A model generated the notes under the pieces. The model saw only the letters and a program-made list of their open reading frames with translations. It was not told the origin of the DNA and did no database searches. DNA of 63,978 bases, the filler included, from Octopus bimaculoides (lineage: Eukaryota): NCBI RefSeq assembly GCF_001194135.2. It is 8 parts of 8 records of this genome, joined end to end, with 100 filler letters (N's around TTAATTAATTAA, not from the genome) between each part and the next. Parts side by side here need not be neighbours in the genome. Positions count along the whole stretch, not along the records: positions 56,773 to 63,978 come from NW_026391934.1; 7 more parts are not named here. One strand, written 5' to 3'. Shown here one piece after another: positions 56,673 to 63,978 of the stretch. Both the position numbers and the translations under genes were made by a program. Every line of letters starts with the position of its first letter. Within the stretch, counting starts at the first letter, position 1.

Positions 56673-56859
56673 NNNNNNNNNNNNNNNNNNNNNNNNNNNN
56701 NNNNNNNNNNNNNNNNTTAATTAATTAANNNNNNNNNNNNNNNNNNNNNNNNNNNNNNNNNNNNNNNNNNNNGAAATAAATAAAGCGTAAGAAATAAATA
56801 AAGCTGATTAAATGATTCGGACCGATTCATTATTTTACTCGCTCAGTCAGGAGTACTAC

Positions 56860-57080
56860 AGACATGTAGTGAGAATATCGAAGGAAAGAATCGCAAGTCA
56901 AATTCTTCGAGCCGAGCCAATCGGCAGGAGACGTAGGGATAGACCAAGCGCAAGATAACTGGATAATATCCATAGCCGCAGTTGGTTACGCTTGGGAATT
57001 CAGCCGGATTTTGATTGGACCCTATTCCCTTCCAGGAATAGAGGACGGAGATGGATGGAGAGTCAGAAGAAGGATAGTAG
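56860..57080 (+). mobile_element. RTE-like LINE ORF2 3' fragment
   Basis: HVVRISKERIASQILRAEPIGRRRRDRPSAR*LDNI matches the HV.RM...RI..QIL...P.G.R..GRP..RW.DNI consensus. Confidence 0.7.
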
Positions 57081-57885
57081 CGATCCTGACCGTTTTGGAG
57101 TCTCAGAGATTGGTGGAAGGCGAAACAGAAATCACCCTCGAATCGGAGATGTGATCTGATTGTTTGCATCAGACTTGACTCCGATGAAGGTTCCCCAAAA
57201 TTAAGTAACGGTGTTAAAGGACACGATTGAAGTGTGCCCAGTAAGCCACGGTAGGATTTGAACTTAGGACCTATAGAACCGGAATATACACCGCAAGGTA
57301 TTTTGTCCGACCTGTTAACGATTCTACCACTCTAGACTGAGATCCCGAGGGGGAGGTGAAAGACAAAGTTGACATGTATTGAACTCAGAATATAAGAAGT
57401 CAGAAAACCTAACTCAAGACATTTCATTTCGTTCGACGCTCTGTCGATACCACCACTTATCTTTCTGACCGCTAGCTCAAGCTGGAGCAGTTTCAGCAAC
57501 ACAGTCTCTTGGTGTTTAAGTTCAGATCAATCGTTTTTTTTATTAGACCTATGATGGAAATTATTCCAACCGTCTGATATAATGAGTCTAATAACACATT
57601 ACATCAGACTACATTATCAAATGTGTCCTACACCACAATGAAAACGAATGGGGCAAGCACTGGGGCATTCCACTACATTTCAGCAGACATAAGAGTTATA
57701 GGCTCTAATTCGATCACTTCCTCCTCAATATCAGCTTCATAGACCTTAATGTGCCCCCTACTACCTTATATAAGCTAATATGTGTGTGTTTGGTGGTAGA
57801 AAACATCTCTCTATATTTATATGTTTGTATTACGTGTGTGTGTGTGTGTGCGCGCGCGCATACATGCATGTATAAATGCATGTAT

Positions 57886-57925
<40 letters not shown>

Positions 57926-57955
57926 NNNNNNNNNNTACACACACACACACACACA

Positions 57956-58325
57956 GTGGAGGCGCAATGGCCCAGTAGTTAGGGCAGCGGACTCGCAGTC
58001 ATCGGATCGCTGTTTCGTTTTCCCAGACCGGGCGTTGTGAGTGTTTATTGAGCGAAAACACCTAAAGCTCCATGAGGCTCCGACAGAGGGTTGTGGAGAA
58101 CCCTGCTGTACTCTTTCACGACAACTTTCTCTCACTCCTTGTTTCTGTTGTACCTGTATTTCAAAGGGGTTAGCCTTGTCATACTCTGTGTCACGCTGAA
58201 TCTCCCCGAGAACTACGTTAATGGAACACGTGTCTGTGGAGTGCTCAGCCACTTGCTAGTTAATTTCACGGATAGGCTGTTCCGTTGATCGGATCAACTG
58301 GAACCGTCGTCGTCGTAAATGATGA
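57956..58325 (+). mobile_element. SINE family C, full-length reference copy
   Basis: tRNA-like head gtggaggcgcaatggcccagtagttagggcagcggactc...gtttcgttttcccagacc, followed by the body. Confidence 0.9.
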
Positions 58326-59115
58326 ATGCCACGAATATATACACATACCAAACTGAGAAAAAAAACTTGTTTAGGGGGATTTGGGATTTTTAAATTTTAT
58401 TTTAAGCTATAATAGTTCAAACAAATTACGCGTTTATTTATCAGAATGTATCCCATCATATTCTATTGTCTGTTTCCATCGTTGTGCCAGAAGCTCAATT
58501 CCACGTTTATACCATTTGGCTGGTTTCAAAGCAAAAGACTCTCTGCGCCCATTCTGAACCACATCCACATTGTTGAACCTCCGTCCGTGCAGGAAATGGG
58601 ACCATGGCTAGGAAAAGGTGTTAATTTGATGATACAAGGTCTGGGCTGTAGACTGAGTGAGGCAACACTCTCAGCCCCTCGAGTTCCTCAAGTATGGCGC
58701 TTGGTTACATTGACAGTGTCTGCTTGGTATTGTCATGAATGTCATCGATTGACCAATACCGGCTAGCAGGTTTTCATAACATCATATACTCACTGTGATT
58801 GTTGAGTTTGTATGTGTGTGCGTGTGTACGCGCGCCGAAGGGCGAGCAATCGCATATATATTCTTTGAGACAGAATGGAAGAAATGGAGAAGAATTTCGA
58901 TTTACCATCACGTACTACTACGTTCAATCCCATTGCAAGTCATATTGTCTTTACCTTGAATAAGTTTTCTCAGAAATTTAAGAGTGTTTGTGGACTATTT
59001 GGCCACTTACAGGCTAAATCAATGAACGGTTAATAATTCATTATAAGGAACAAATAATTACACGGCTTTCAAACATATGGAGATCCATTTACAAGACATA
59101 GAATACCCTTCCCCC

Positions 59116-59149
<34 letters not shown>

Positions 59150-59195
59150 ATGGATGTATTTTGTATAGATTTCTGAAACATACACTATTTATATG

Positions 59196-59252
<57 letters not shown>

Positions 59253-59432
59253 ACAAATCTACATGTAAACATATAATATATATATATAGGCTCAGGAACA
59301 CGGTGTGCAGGGGTGCCAACGTGCCCCCCTAACATTTTTGAAGAGCAGTGAAAACGCTTTGAACATCCTCTTAAAAATCTGAGTTTGCACCAACCCCCAT
59401 CCCCAAGCAGATTTCGTTCTCGCACTTGTGAC

Positions 59433-59518
<86 letters not shown>

Positions 59519-60275
59519 TACACCTTTCTGTTAGGTTTAGTATGTTTGTACATCCACACATTTTTATATCACTAAAGACATTTTTTAAGTCCTTGACCAT
59601 CGTCCACTGGTCATTTGGAACATCTCGCACCGAACAGGAGCCAAGGATGATCTGCAAGTGGTAAGGACAACGCGACTGAAGAAAAATCCAATTGCCCATA
59701 AATTCTCAAACATGGCAGTGTNNNNNNNNNNNNNNNNNNNNNNNNNNNNNNNNNNNNNNNNNNNNNNNNNNNNNNNNNNNNNNNNNNNNNNNNNNNNNNN
59801 NNNNNNNNNNNNNNNNNNNNNNNNNNNNNNNNNNNNNNNNNNNNNNNNNNNNNNNNNNNNNNNNNNNNNNNNNNNNNNNNNNNNNNNNNNNNNNNNNNNN
59901 NNNNNNNNNNNNNNNNNNNNNNNNNNNNNNNNNNNNNNNNNNNNNNNNNNNNNNNNNNNNNNNNNNNNNNNNNNNNNNNNNNNNNNNNNNNNNNNNNNNN
60001 NNNNNNNNNNNNNNNNNNNNNNNNNNNNNNNNNNNNNNNNNNNNNNNNNNNNNNNNNNNNNNNNNNNNNNNNNNNNNNNNNNNNNNNNNNNNNNNNNNNN
60101 NNNNNNNNNNNNNNNNNNNNNNNNNNNNNNNNNNNNNNNNNNNNNNNNNNNNNNNNNNNNNNNNNNNNNNNNNNNNNNNNNNNNNNNNNNNNNNNNNNNN
60201 NNNNNNNNNNNNNNNNNNNNNNNNNNNNNNNNNNNNNNNNNNNNNNNNNNNNNNNNNNNNNNNNNNNNNNNNNNN

Positions 60276-60610
60276 TGTGGTAAGTAGCTTGTTTACTAAC
60301 CACATGGTTCTGGGTTCAGTCCTACTGCGTGGCACCTTGGGCAAATGTCTTCTACTATAGCCTCGGGCCGACCAAAGCCTTGTGAGTGGATTTGGTAAAC
60401 GGAAACTGAAAGAAGCCCGTCGTATATATATATATATGTGTGTTTGTGTGTCTGTGTTTCTCCCCCCACCATCGCTTGACAACCGATGCTGGTGTGTTTA
60501 CGTCCCCGTAACTTAGCGGCTCGGCAAAAAGTGACCGATCGAATAAGTACTAGGCTTACAAAGAATAAGTCCTGGGGTCGATTTTCTCGACTAAAGGCGA
60601 TGCTCCAGCA
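60276..60610 (+). mobile_element. SINE family B, near full-length
   Basis: Head tgtggtaagtagc...gggttcagtcctactgcg, internal (TA)(TG) microsatellite, tail ...gcagtcaaatgactgaaacaggtaaaagag. Confidence 0.9.
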
Positions 60611-60781
60611 TGGCCGCAGTCAAATGACTGAAACAGGTAAAAGAGTATAGGTATAAATATTTAAATTGAAATGTCTATAAATATATGGATACAAATGTGT
60701 ATATAGATTTATATGTGCGTATATATGCTATATACTCTTACGTTGGGTGTGCGTGTGTATATATATATATATATAAATATA

Positions 60782-63700
60782 TATAAGTATAAGTTAGGAA
60801 TGTTTAAACATTCAACTGATAGGCTTGAAGTGTTTAAGCAACTAAGGGATAATTAAATCCCAAGGTGCTCCTGGAGATTACCTGTGTGGGTACCGTCTTT
60901 GTTAGAAGGTATCTAGAGACAGGTAATTTATCGTGTAAACCGCAGTTTATAAGTATAATCATGTAGAGAATGGAGAAACAAACACAGGAAGAAGCAGGTC
61001 GATTGCGCTAGTTAGCCATTAATTTAATCAATTAGGTAGAGATTGTGTAATGTTACATTTACGATCGTTTCGATTTGCCAATTTAAATTGGCAGATCTCT
61101 TCAGAATGTAGAGAAGTATGTTTACATGCATGGGTTGAGAGATGTGCTAATGTACAGGAATGCATATAGTGGTTTGAGAATAGAGGTAAGGTATAGTGAG
61201 TCTTACATTTTAGTCGAAGTCAGAGTTAATATTTCTGCGAAGGAGAGGTAGGGCGGGTGCTTTTTAAGTCCGTAATTTCAATCTTCGTCAAGCGCATTAC
61301 TCACGTGGCTGTTGTTAAATCAAGCAAATGTTGTGTTTCATTTGAACCGGCGGTCTAAGTAAAGGGAGTAACTCTAAGTTTTGGTGAAGAGGGAGCTAAC
61401 TCTGTCCTAGTAAATATTTAATTATACTTAGAAAATGAAAATTCTGTAGTGTATAGACAAACTATGTTATTTTCGTATTTTTTGTTTAGAAGATGTGTTG
61501 TAGCGTTAGGATTTCGAGGCGTTCAGTTAGGCAAAGGTCACAACGTCTGTTAATTGAGTTATAAGAATTTGCTGTTCTGAGTATATGCCATTTTAGTTTG
61601 TATGCTATATTATTGTCCTTTAATTCCCAGGTATAGTCCTGTTGAGTTTGCCTTCTTTCTATTTCTAAAGCTAGACTGGTGTTTATTGTATCTAAGTCGT
61701 ATTTAATTTTTCGTGGTCCCAATGTATGATCTTATATGGCTGTTTGTGTGTACGTCGCATTGGTAAACTACATTTTCAGTCTTACATCTATTGGAGAAAT
61801 TGCCTTTATTCCTATCCCTACAGCTACATAAATTATAAGGGGTGTCTGTGTCGGTGTGTTGTTGTGCGGCCCTATTGTTCTTTTGATGTGTGTCTCTGTT
61901 AGCAAGGGGCGTTAGATTAGAGTTGGGGTTTGTTGTATTTGTCGGACGGCTGCTAGTTTGGTTGTTCATGGTCTTTCTAGCTGCATAGAATGCGTCAATT
62001 TTTTTATTATTAATAGAGGCTATGATGGTAGCTAAGTTACATGTCAGGCTGTGGCCGATTCTAATTTTGTTCTTAAATATTGCTGCATATTTATTATTTA
62101 CATTTAGATGTTTATCTATTATGTTCATTAATGAATGGACTATGTTGGATTTGAGGTTCATGGTGAAGGGGATAATTAACCAGATCGTATCATTATTGCG
62201 CATATTGTTATTACGGTTATGCCTGGTATAGAACCTGCCATCATAGCTGGAAAGGCTAATGAATTTGCCTTTGTGGCTATCTAATTTGTTTCTATGGTTA
62301 GGTTTATTATTAGTATGTGTCTTATCAGTGTTAGCTGGGTTAATATTGTTTGTTTTTTGTGGGCCCGGCGTCAAGGGTTTAAGGTTTATAACAGGGTTTA
62401 TTTTAGTTCGCTGTTATTAATAATATTCTTATCTTTGCGTGGCTTAATGTTGATTATGTTCTGGTTGTTATTGTATTCCCGTTTCATTATGTTATTAGTT
62501 TTATTAATGTTAATCGTATCATTGGTATTGGTGTTTACGCTGTTGTTGATATTTTTGGTGTTATGTGGGTTGGCTTTGGGATCCTTTGTATAATTATTAT
62601 TATTTTTATTATGTTTAATTGTGTCCTTCTTATTCTTGGTGTGGTTTGCAGTAGGGTTTGGTGTGTTATTATTGTATGTGTTAATATCATTTAGATTCCC
62701 TTTATTTCGGTCATTTGTATGGTTATTGGGGGCTAGGTATTTAATTTTATGGTTGAATCCTGCTTTATGTAGTGCGATATTATAGATATCCTTATGCTTA
62801 TTAAAAATATCCTGGTTAGAGGAGAGGCGTATATATTCTATTGTTTATGCTATGTACTAAGCCTCTCTTAAGGAATAGCAGCTGGTTACTGGATGTGTTT
62901 ATGTATTTGAGGTTAGTGTTTGGTTTTATGTAAGGTTCATGGAGTCCTGTGGCTAGGTTGCAGTTTGCGCCGAAGTAATTTATGGAGGTGTGTTCATTTT
63001 CTATGGAAATGGCTAGTCCGAATCTTTTAAAGAATTTGTGTAGGTTTTTCTTGATGAGTTCAAGTTTCTTGTTTGAGGGATTATTAATTACGAAAAGCGC
63101 GTCGTCCCTGTATAAGCCTCCCTTGAGATCTGGGAATTCATCCTGTATGTATGAAGACAAATATATGCCCACTAAGTCAGTTATCTGAGTTAAATCCGGG
63201 GATCCCATGGTGATGTCGAAATAGTTTGGAGAGTCCTTCCGGACCCAGATTTTGTTATCAAAGCTTATAACTGATTTCCTTGCTTCTAGTATTACTTTTA
63301 TTTCTTTCATAGTTAGATGTGAGTGGTTTTTGGCGAATATTAGGGCACTATTTAGGATCGTGGGGTTAATTCAGGAGTAGTAATCTACTATGTCTATCTC
63401 TATGAATTTATAGTTTTCAGTGTTCGGTATTTTGGAGAACCAATTTAGGGCTTCGTATGTGTTGGACAATAATTCAAGGATGAGTCTACTTTTTAGTTTA
63501 GGGATGTACTTATTTAGTATTAGCTTACTTAATTTACATAGGTCTGACTTATTTGGGAATATTAATCTAACTTTAGAGTCTGTTAGGAAGTTAGGTTTAT
63601 GGTCTTTTAGTGTGATTCTAGGTCTAAGTGGTAGAAATGGCTCAGTTTTTTCACCTAAGTTATAGTCTAACATGATGTCCTTGGCTGCTAAGTTCATGGA

Positions 63701-63900
63701 TTGTAAGGTGCTATCTGGTGCTATTTTATTTTTTTTTTGTAATTTCTTTGTGTAGCAGTTGGTGGTATAAGTTAATATTAATAGTGTAAGAATTCCCTTT
63801 TTTGTCCGAGTGGACAATAATTCCGTTCTGGGATTTTAGCTTGTGCAGGAGGTCTTTAAGGTACTTTTGGTAACTACTGTTCCTTAGTGGGTGTCGCTTG
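60782..63900 (-). mobile_element. 5'-truncated Penelope-like retroelement (Naiad-type RT plus C-terminal GIY-YIG endonuclease) with a 3' pseudo-LTR; decayed
   Basis: IVHSDKKGNSY; RITLKDHKPNF...KVRLIFPNKSDL; FIEIDIVDYY; FDITMGS.D..QITDLVGIYL; GGLYRDDAL; YIKPNTNLKYINTSSN; IW..PF..N.KSNI; CSCR...RC..ENVVYQC...YIGTT; WELKD.NI.Y.LKW.IL...Y....RRCDLCLTER. It carries several stops and frameshifts. The pLTR is about 60782-61480. Confidence 0.92.
61054..61110 (-). ncRNA. Intact type I hammerhead ribozyme in the pLTR
   Basis: Minus strand: TACATT / CTGAAGA / GATCTGCCAATTTAAATTGGCAAATC / GAAA / CGATCG / TA / AATGTA. Stem I is a perfect 6 bp, the core is canonical, stem II is long and near-palindromic, and stem III is minimal and palindromic. 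Predicted cleavage after GUA, between 61060 and 61059. Confidence 0.9.
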
Positions 63901-63978
63901 AATTTAACATTACATAATCTCTACCTAACTAGCACAATCGACCTGCTTTTTCGTGTATTTGTTTCTCCATTCTCTACA
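63901..63978 (+). mobile_element. Inverted copy of the pLTR joined to the truncated 5' end of the Penelope ORF (runs off the window)
   Basis: aatttaacattacataatctctacc-taactagcacaatcgacctgc...gtttctccattctctaca aligns to the minus strand of 61059 to about 60962, apart from an indel of about 20 bp. Confidence 0.88.

What the first reader, a model, noticed from the sequence alone, without database searches (positions are those of the whole stretch)
63880..63978. Inverted pLTR begins exactly at the hammerhead self-cleavage site
Seen: the Penelope ORF is truncated at 63900 and joined to an inverted pLTR copy starting AATTTAACATTACATAATC. The predicted 3' cleavage product of the ribozyme at 61054-61110 starts AATGTAACATTACACAATC (17/19 identical). 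Similarity stops at the scissile bond: upstream the pLTR reads ...GATCGTA, whereas the inverted copy is preceded by ...CGCTTG. Established: Penelope-like elements often carry inverted 5' pLTRs and encode hammerheads. Inference: the junction records reverse transcriptase acting at a ribozyme-generated RNA end. This would be a genomic trace showing that self-cleavage occurred in vivo and shaped the insertion.
Basis: partly seen in the sequence, partly recalled or inferred. Interest (0 to 1): 0.85.

Follow-up and report, generated by a model that had tools for sequence, protein, structure and literature searches.

The report
Retrotransposon copy starting at ribozyme cut site
In an octopus Penelope-like retrotransposon, a second, oppositely oriented copy begins at the exact base where the element's hammerhead ribozyme would cut its RNA, which fits copying of a self-cleaved RNA but is a single case that related elements do not repeat.

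Summary
The piece resembles Octopus bimaculoides DNA. Its minus strand carries a decayed, 5'-truncated Penelope-like element (PLE) with a reverse transcriptase and a GIY-YIG endonuclease. A complete type-I minimal hammerhead sits at 61110..61054, with its scissile bond between 61060 and 61059. At 63901-63978 a plus-strand segment matches the post-cleavage sequence (about 91% identity, one 20-nt indel). The similarity ends exactly at +1; the six bases beyond it do not match.

The layout is head-to-head. This is the known PLE "inverted 5'-truncated copy", and it has the same topology as a twin-priming inversion. The base at the junction therefore marks where a second cDNA stopped. Run-off on a hammerhead-cleaved RNA explains that most simply, but this is one locus.

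In about 90 related PLE loci I found four inverted junctions and about a dozen copy 5' ends. None lies at +1. They fall inside ORFs, or at -44, +30, +102 to +130 relative to cleavage. Two independent full-length copies start at the first base of the hammerhead, so their RNA was not cut there.

The piece ends 78 nt past the junction, and no other copy of this family with a pLTR could be reached. The inference is plausible but unproven. The decisive test is a genome-wide census.

The parts
63901..63978 (+). 5' end of an oppositely oriented PLE segment. It begins at the base equivalent to hammerhead +1 and is cut off by the end of the piece.
   Evidence: Inverted-repeat arms I1 and I2; alignment A1; 71/78 identical plus a 20-nt indel relative to 61059..60962.
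61486..63900 (-). Decayed, 5'-truncated PLE ORF with several stops and frameshifts. It shows a DKG-like motif (DKKGNS), an RT with FIEIDIVDYYS and GLYRDDALF, a low-complexity N-rich linker, a CX..C linker, and a GIY-YIG-like VVYQC...SYIGTT. About 90 N-terminal codons are missing.
   Evidence: Translations. 39 homologues at E down to 1e-75, with 87% identity to an O. bimaculoides protein. tblastn of P0001 and P0006. No Pfam hit for this copy or its relatives.
61111..61485 (-). 3' untranslated region between the ORF end and the hammerhead.
   Evidence: Sequence. The exact ORF end is uncertain because of decay.
61054..61110 (-). Type-I minimal hammerhead ribozyme. Helix I is 6 bp and helix II is 11 bp with one mismatch. 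Helix III is 2 bp with loop GAUC, inside the 8-nt palindrome ACGAUCGU typical of dimer-acting PLE hammerheads. Predicted cleavage lies between 61060 and 61059.
   Evidence: Motif scans; simulation; Rfam sub-threshold; custom model R1, 22.6 bits, E 6e-5.
60792..61059 (-). Post-cleavage part of the 3' pLTR. It has an ATG at 60964-60962 and weak similarity to the N-terminal coding region of related PLEs.
   Evidence: Homology to the inverted segment up to 60962. Similarity of IPSNKD..EHL to L004's IPLPSEKD..EHL is only suggestive. The end of the element is inferred from the adjacent microsatellite.
60758..60791 (.). TA-rich microsatellite abutting the 3' end of the minus-strand copy; the likely insertion target.
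   Evidence: Tandem Repeats Finder. Related copies also abut (TA)n: L001 12651, L004, L008, L010, L029.

Best explanation
Two copies of one Penelope-like retrotransposon family are joined head to head.

The minus-strand copy was made by target-primed reverse transcription. Synthesis started in the pLTR downstream of the hammerhead, next to a (TA)n target, and stopped about 390 nt short of the RNA 5' end.

The plus-strand segment was made from the opposite DNA strand. It is either a second cDNA on the same RNA (a twin-priming-like 5' inversion) or a cDNA on another RNA of the family. Its synthesis ended at the 5' end of an RNA that the hammerhead had already cut, so the cDNA ran off at +1. The two cDNA ends were then joined.

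Shown: the anatomy, the intact hammerhead core, and the exact coincidence of the end of homology with the predicted scissile bond.

Inferred: that the RNA was cleaved, that the end is a run-off product, and that both halves arose in one event.
For: The repeat arm ends exactly at +1.

The hammerhead has a complete catalytic core and all three helices. It matches a model built only from other PLE hammerheads.

The junction topology, rc(+1) joined to an internal ORF position, is the same as in L008. There the first ~125 nt of the element are inverted in place with AGCTG microhomology. It is also the topology of the inverted copies in L004 and L009.

A purified PLE protein cleaves and extends both DNA strands, starts reverse transcription inside the pLTR downstream of the hammerhead, and stimulates hammerhead cleavage (PMC11167929). 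Together these predict short cDNAs that end at +1.

The arms are 91% identical with an indel, so the junction is not a fold-back sequencing artefact of one locus.

The chance of an exact hit is about 1/3400 if truncation points are uniform and about 1/180 if the end is a near-full-length one.
Against: This is a single junction, flagged after the fact.

The piece ends 78 nt past the junction, so the length and far end of the plus-strand segment and any target duplication cannot be seen.

In related PLE families no copy begins at +1 and none ends at -1. That covers about 12 same-family boundaries around 28 hammerhead sites. Two independent full-length copies (L034, L035) begin at the first base of the hammerhead, so those RNAs were not cut.

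In vitro, hammerhead mutants do not change insertion by the Anolis PLE, and no RNA-seq reads start or end at its cleavage site (PMC11167929).

Minimal PLE hammerheads cleave poorly in vitro (PMC4209133).

A real boundary at +5 cannot be fully excluded.
Confidence: 0.42

Rival explanations
1. Coincidence. The plus-strand segment is an ordinary 5'-truncated or near-full-length copy. Its end was set by random termination of reverse transcription or by end joining, and it happens to fall at +1.
For: Inverted junctions and 5' ends in related families are scattered: inside ORFs, and at -215, -44, +30, +102, +124, +130. Ends of near-full-length copies concentrate within about 180 nt of the hammerhead, which raises the chance of a hit. 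The finding was selected because of the coincidence. The first four bases include a mismatch, which loosens the exactness.
Against: Even under the generous model the probability of an exact hit is below 1%. The position is the one base that a specific published hypothesis predicts (PMC4209133, PMC6431247).
Confidence: 0.35
2. Reverse transcriptase stalled at the folded hammerhead without any cleavage. The block would be the base of helix III (possibly an intermolecular 8-bp ACGAUCGU duplex) or of helix II. The cDNA was then joined there.
For: The palindrome ACGAUCGU ends one base before the cleavage site, and an 11-bp helix II follows. Structure-induced stops would fall within a base or two of +1.
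Against: The minus-strand copy in the same locus, and L004, L009, L034 and L035, were all copied straight through their hammerheads.
Confidence: 0.1
3. The base is the family's normal transcription start, so full-length cDNAs end there irrespective of the ribozyme.
For: Related families have family-specific, reproducible 5' ends near the hammerhead: -44/-42 in L034 and L035, and about +106 to +108 in L008 and L010.
Against: The context GTA|AAT has a purine at -1 and no initiator-like motif (my reading of the sequence). An exact match to the scissile bond would still be a coincidence.
Confidence: 0.06
4. The junction is not an original insertion junction. It is either an assembly mis-join in a gapped short-read scaffold or a later DNA rearrangement or nested insertion.
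For: The scaffold has N gaps at 57926-57938 and 59722-60275. PLE inverted structures are known to trouble short-read assemblies (PMC8557442). The sequence stops 78 nt after the junction.
Against: The junction lies inside 3.7 kb of contiguous sequence. The two sides share no repeat that could cause a mis-join at that base. The arms are diverged, not identical. No hammerhead half is found on the far side of the minus-strand copy (60640-60790), as a nested insertion into the site would require.
Confidence: 0.07

Closest known systems
Canonical EN+ Penelope-like elements with pLTRs, an inverted 5'-truncated upstream copy and a minimal type-I hammerhead (Penelope/Poseidon/Neptune-type; PMC8557442, PMC4209133)
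   Same: RT followed by a C-terminal GIY-YIG-like endonuclease with a Cys linker. A hammerhead with a short helix III and a palindromic loop in the terminal repeat. A head-to-head inverted copy at the 5' side. A 3' end next to (TA)n.
   Different: In published descriptions the inverted copy is truncated at variable positions. No link between its end and the ribozyme cleavage site was found in the papers searched. Clade assignment was not tested, and Pfam models do not recognise this lineage.
Poseidon element PAc of Anolis carolinensis, reconstituted in vitro (PMC11167929)
   Same: The hammerhead sits close to the ORF start inside the pLTR. Reverse transcription starts internally, downstream of the hammerhead. 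The protein cuts and extends both DNA strands, which gives a route to head-to-head copies. Hammerhead cleavage is assisted by the protein.
   Different: For PAc, cleavage was dispensable for insertion, and no RNA ends were seen at the cleavage site. Here the evidence is a genomic junction at that site, with no biochemistry.
L1 twin-priming 5' inversions (my own knowledge: Ostertag and Kazazian 2001)
   Same: The inverted segment's 5'-most base abuts an internal position of the direct segment. L008 shows a clear PLE example with microhomology.
   Different: Contiguity of the inverted and direct segments cannot be checked here because the piece ends. PLE endonuclease and priming rules differ from those of L1.
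R2 elements, whose 5' end is made by an HDV-like ribozyme (PMC3774820)
   Same: A self-cleaving ribozyme defines the RNA 5' end, and so the 5' junction of new insertions.
   Different: R2 uses a different ribozyme class, and the effect is seen at most R2 junctions. Here it is one copy, and related PLE families do not show it.
Metazoan non-LTR retrozymes (PMC7229834; bioRxiv 10.64898/2026.07.22.740005)
   Same: Type-I hammerheads related to PLE pLTRs that do self-cleave in vivo, giving circular RNAs. They are probably mobilised by PLEs.
   Different: Retrozymes are short non-coding tandem repeats with canonical hammerheads. This is an autonomous-type element with a minimal hammerhead and no tandem array in view.

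Membership tests
Penelope-like element (EN+) | Reverse transcriptase domain of the PLE type | tested here: inconclusive
   RT motifs are readable (FIEIDIVDYYS, GLYRDDALF, a DKG-like DKKGNS). There is strong homology to a family of 500-630 aa proteins (E to 1e-75). No Pfam RVT hit for this copy or six relatives. No phylogeny against named PLE clades was made.
Penelope-like element (EN+) | C-terminal GIY-YIG endonuclease after a Cys-rich linker | tested here: inconclusive
   CSCRDRNKGNFSNRC, then VVYQC...SYIGTT...RYNKH, in the window. These are collinear with CNCR..CP..G.C and SVVYQA..YVGLT..F..H in P0006 and P0011. No Pfam GIY-YIG hit.
Penelope-like element (EN+) | Terminal repeats (pLTR), direct or inverted, with an adjacent inverted 5'-truncated copy | tested here: met
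   An inverted repeat of at least 78 nt at the 5' side of the truncated ORF. The same architecture occurs in relatives L004, L008 and L009.
Penelope-like element (EN+) | Hammerhead motif inside the terminal repeat | tested here: met
   61110..61054 on the element's strand, about 375 nt after the ORF. Relatives carry one 100-240 nt after the ORF.
Hammerhead ribozyme, type I (Rfam RF00163 / PLE minimal variant) | Conserved core CUGANGA ... GAAA ... UH and three helices in type-I order | tested here: met
   CUGAAGA, GAAA, GUA. Helix I is 6 bp, helix II is 11 bp with 1 mismatch, helix III is 2 bp. Expected by chance 0.001 per piece.
Hammerhead ribozyme, type I (Rfam RF00163 / PLE minimal variant) | Score at or above Rfam's gathering threshold | tested here: not met
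   13.5 bits against 34, E 1.7 on a 171-nt search, and not listed in the 7.2-kb search. The long helix II and minimal helix III depart from the Rfam model, as the minimal PLE hammerheads described in the literature also do (PMC4209133).
Hammerhead ribozyme, type I (Rfam RF00163 / PLE minimal variant) | Match to a model of hammerheads from related PLEs, with helices supported by covariation | tested here: met
   Model R1 was built from 19 sequences without this one. 92% of cells are paired, 13 of 17 pairs change on both sides, and 0 of 500 shuffles do as well. The sequences were picked by a scan that required pairing, so part of this is circular. The window scores 22.6 bits, E 6e-5, full length, and is the top hit.
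Hammerhead ribozyme, type I (Rfam RF00163 / PLE minimal variant) | Self-cleavage at the predicted bond | not testable with these tools
   Needs in vitro transcription of monomer and dimer constructs, with and without the element's protein.
Twin-priming-type 5' inversion | The 5'-most base of the inverted segment abuts an internal position of the direct segment | tested here: met
   rc(+1) is joined to ORF codon ~90 at 63900|63901.
Twin-priming-type 5' inversion | Inverted and direct segments are contiguous in the element, and target-site duplications flank the whole | not testable with these tools
   The piece ends at 63978. Exact-sequence look-ups of ten ORFs from this locus found no other assembly of it.
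Ribozyme-defined 5' ends of retrotransposon insertions (as in R2) | Many independent copies share a 5' end at the cleavage site | tested here: not met
   The same family could not be sampled. The only other copy, L001 9827-11916, is a plain truncation, and its pLTR lies in an N gap. In related families, 0 of about 12 boundaries lie at +1. This test is weak: run-off products there would be only 38-52 nt long, and the loci were chosen for having ORFs.

The most novel reading that the evidence does not exclude
Hammerhead self-cleavage of PLE RNA happens in vivo. It sets the end of a class of cDNAs: short or inverted copies that begin at +1. Genomic junctions would then be a fossil record of ribozyme activity, and the ribozyme would help generate the inverted pLTR structures typical of PLEs.
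Probability: 0.3. Interest if true: 0.7.

Novelty: new member of a known kind. Interest (0 to 1): 0.4.

Why it matters
What hammerheads do in autonomous Penelope-like elements is still open. Processing of precursor RNA has been proposed (PMC4209133, PMC6431247). However, in vitro cleavage is weak, it is dispensable for insertion by the one reconstituted element, and no RNA ends were found at the site (PMC11167929, PMC8557442).

A reproducible pile-up of copy ends at +1 would be the first in vivo evidence that cleaved RNA serves as a template. It would parallel the role of the HDV-like ribozyme in R2.

One junction cannot carry that weight. It does give a sharp test that can be run on any PLE-rich genome assembly.

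Tried and rejected
1. Rfam search of the whole piece. The hammerhead was not listed, and the only hits were microsatellite-driven miRNA look-alikes.

2. Pfam on the window ORF and six relatives. No hits.

3. Extending the locus beyond 63978 by exact look-up of ten ORFs. None is on record.

4. Looking for other pLTR copies of this family in three octopus loci.
- L001-L003 contain none.
- The closest copy (L001, 79% nt identity) loses its pLTR in an N gap.
- The Logan contigs L006 and L007 are a 58%-identical family that stops 118 nt before the ATG. The resemblance of the L006 start to the +1 sequence is too weak to use.

5. Nested insertion into the hammerhead site. Rejected: no hammerhead half lies beyond the other end of the minus-strand copy.

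6. Palindrome-mediated DNA inversion. Rejected: the ACGATCGT centre is 5 nt from the junction.

7. Protein-level proof that the post-cleavage region encodes the N terminus. Only suggestive.

8. RNAcofold of two hammerheads. It preferred intermolecular helix II pairing and said nothing about the helix III dimer.

9. P0017 contig look-up. Not on record.

Full report
**What is in the piece**

The 7.2-kb piece (56773-63978) is animal DNA rich in microsatellites, with two N gaps. Its RT-like ORF is 87% identical to an annotated Octopus bimaculoides protein (P0002).

The element lies on the minus strand. Translations show a decayed ORF running from the junction at 63900 down to about 61486. Its readable features, in order:
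- a DKG-like motif (IIVHSDKKGNS)
- RT motifs (FIEIDIVDYYS, GLYRDDALF)
- an asparagine-rich low-complexity stretch
- a Cys linker (CSCRDRNKGNFSNRC)
- a GIY-YIG-like block (VVYQC...SYIGTT...RYNKH)

It has several stops and frameshifts. tblastn with two fuller relatives aligns the ORF up to about 63908 and shows that roughly 90 N-terminal codons are missing. Pfam recognises neither this copy nor six relatives. The assignment to Penelope-like elements therefore rests on motif order, on the homologues' RT, Cys-linker and GIY-YIG layout, and on the terminal repeat with a hammerhead.

**The hammerhead**

On the minus strand, 61110..61054 reads UACAUU CUGAAGA GAUCUGCCAAUU-UA-AAUUGGCAAAUC GAAA C GAUC G UA | AAUGUA.
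- All core bases are present.
- Helix I has 6 bp.
- Helix II has 11 bp with one mismatch.
- Helix III is two pairs closing GAUC, inside the 8-nt palindrome ACGAUCGU. This is the dimer-type arrangement described for PLE hammerheads (PMC4209133).

My descriptor scan finds it as the only hit in the piece. Simulated sequence gives 0.001 hits per piece. Rfam's type-I model gives only 13.5 bits, below its threshold of 34.

I then built a covariance model from 19 hammerheads found next to related PLE ORFs, leaving this one out. It scores the window motif at 22.6 bits, E about 6e-5, over its full length, as the best hit in the piece. Cleavage is therefore predicted after A61060, and +1 is 61059.

**The junction**

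The repeat finder gives two inverted arms: 61032-61059 with 63901-63928, and 60962-61015 with 63925-63978. Both are 93% complementary, and a 20-nt indel separates them (alignment). The arm ends at 61059, which is exactly +1.

Beyond it, the six bases on each side agree at 2 of 6. The only looseness is a mismatch at base 4. If the first three bases matched by chance, the true boundary would be +5; I put that at a few per cent.

**What the topology means**

Read along the element's sense strand, the order is rc(+98)...rc(+1) | ORF codon ~90 ... stop ... hammerhead ... +1 ... (TA)n. Two copies meet at their 5' ends, with their 3' ends pointing outwards. This is the "inverted 5'-truncated copy" drawn for PLEs (PMC8557442). 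It is also the topology of a twin-priming inversion, where the base at the internal junction is where the second cDNA stopped.

A purified PLE protein cuts and extends both DNA strands and starts reverse transcription inside the pLTR downstream of the hammerhead (PMC11167929). That gives a concrete route to such pairs.

The post-cleavage region of the 3' pLTR has an ATG 98 nt after +1. It also shows weak, collinear similarity to the N-terminal coding region of relatives (IPSNKD..EHL against IPLPSEKD..EHL). This is only suggestive.

If that similarity is real, the plus-strand segment could be one of three things:
- a short copy from +1 to the priming site
- the inverted first ~390 nt of the same element
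- a whole second copy

The piece ends 78 nt past the junction, just before that ATG, so this cannot be settled. In each case the plus-strand copy's 5' end is at +1.

**Is it general?**

I could not sample this family further.
- The three octopus loci reached through annotated proteins hold no pLTR of the family.
- The closest copy (L001 9827-11916, 79% nt identity) is a plain truncation. Its 3' region falls in an N gap that is followed by (TA)n.

I therefore looked at related PLEs: six loci from assemblies (L004-L010) and 80 from a metagenome scan.

*Inverted junctions*
- L004 2945|2946: a 897-nt, 100% identical inverted copy, truncated inside the ORF and including its hammerhead.
- L009 9849|9850: truncated inside the ORF.
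- L009 12452-15162: a 1351-nt perfect palindrome with a 9-nt spacer, both arms cut at the same codon.
- L008 9713-9835: an in-place inversion of the first ~125 nt with AGCTG microhomology.

*Copy 5' ends relative to cleavage*
- -44/-42: L034 and L035, two independent full-length copies with different flanks, both starting at the first base of the hammerhead.
- About +30 to +39: L029, at an ATATAT next to a (TA)n target.
- +102: L022.
- +124: L030.
- About +106 to +130: L004, L008, L010.
- -215: L003.

In a census of same-family homology boundaries within 250 nt of 28 hammerhead sites, none starts at +1 and none ends at -1.

*Limits of this test*
- It concerns other families.
- The loci were chosen for having ORFs.
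- In those families the element ends only 38-52 nt (or about 102 nt) after the hammerhead, so run-off copies would be too short to detect.

The census does show two things. Ribozyme-defined ends are not the rule in this clade. Full-length 5' ends cluster within about 180 nt of the hammerhead, which raises the chance probability of an exact hit from about 1/3400 to about 1/180.

**Weighing**

Run-off on a cleaved RNA predicts exactly this base, and it fits what is known of PLE priming and of protein-assisted cleavage. Against it stand the sample size of one, selection after the fact, the negative pattern in relatives, and published in vitro and RNA-seq data that found no role or trace of cleavage (PMC11167929).

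- Cleaved-template run-off: about 0.4.
- Plain coincidence: about 0.35.
- The remainder goes to structure-induced stalling, a transcription start at that base, and an artefact or later rearrangement.

A fold-back artefact is unlikely because the arms are diverged and differ by an indel. A nested insertion into the site is unlikely because no hammerhead half lies beyond the other end of the minus-strand copy.

**Comparison with the literature**

The element and its architecture are of a known kind. I found no report linking PLE inversion junctions or copy ends to the hammerhead cleavage site in the papers searched.

The closest established parallel is R2, whose HDV-like ribozyme cuts at the precise 5' junction (PMC3774820). 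Hammerheads related to PLE pLTRs do cleave in vivo in retrozymes (PMC7229834).

The finding is best treated as a sharp hypothesis that is cheap to test, not as evidence. The test is a census of copy ends in the octopus genome.

Noticed in passing
L034 2280 and L035 1426: Two independent full-length PLE copies (99.7% identical, with unrelated flanks, one a (CATA)n microsatellite) both begin at the first base of the hammerhead. Both end 38 nt after the next hammerhead, which gives an 83-nt terminal direct repeat. This suggests that this family's RNA starts exactly at the ribozyme and is copied uncleaved.
   Followed up: partly
L009 12452-15162: A perfect palindrome: two 1351-nt PLE arms, 100% complementary, separated by 9 nt, both truncated at the same ORF codon. 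It looks like a snap-back or hairpin product of reverse transcription.
   Followed up: no
L008 9713-9835: In-place inversion of the first ~125 nt of a PLE (5' UTR plus 26 codons), with 5-nt AGCTG microhomology at the junction. This is a twin-priming-like signature in a PLE.
   Followed up: partly
L029 981 and 3378: A unit-length PLE copy that begins and ends in the element's own ATATAT stretch (+31 to +39 after the hammerhead). It is inserted in a (TA)n microsatellite, as if both priming and 5' joining used TA microhomology.
   Followed up: no
L004 1-566: Hammerhead-bearing 253-bp tandem repeats (99% identical units) lie next to PLE copies, with an inverted hammerhead at the contig edge. They are retrozyme-like. 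A stretch adjoining (TA)n, TAGTTGATTTGCAGAACTGCTGTCAGAGTGCTCAAT, recurs in L004 and L008 and in diverged form in L010. It may be the PLE 'tail'.
   Followed up: partly
L001 17385-17426 and L003 9500-9541: A second octopus PLE family carries a hammerhead-like motif with the core CCGACGA instead of CUGAUGA. It is the same in O. bimaculoides and O. sinensis, and in L001 lies 176 nt upstream of the ORF start. It is either an inactivated ribozyme kept in two species or a core variant.
   Followed up: no
window 58450-58600, minus strand: The translation ...HGRRFNNVDVVQNGRRESFALKPAKWYKRGIELLAQRWKQTIEYDGIHSDK* looks to me like the C-terminal end of a mariner-type transposase. This is a recollection, not a test.
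   Followed up: no
window 57957-58060 and 60276-60400: Stretches with tRNA-like boxes (for example GGCGCAATGGCCCAGTAGTTAGGGCAGCGGACTCGCAGTC) look like SINE copies. ARAGORN calls no tRNA.
   Followed up: partly
window 59433-59518, 59198-59250, 57889-57925: Long microsatellites, (GACA/GATA)n, (TG)n and (TA)n, account for the sub-threshold miRNA look-alike hits in Rfam.
   Followed up: yes
window 61900-62700, minus strand; also P0002, P0003, P0034: The octopus members of this PLE lineage carry a long asparagine- and threonine-rich low-complexity insert between the RT and the endonuclease. The non-octopus relatives lack it.
   Followed up: no
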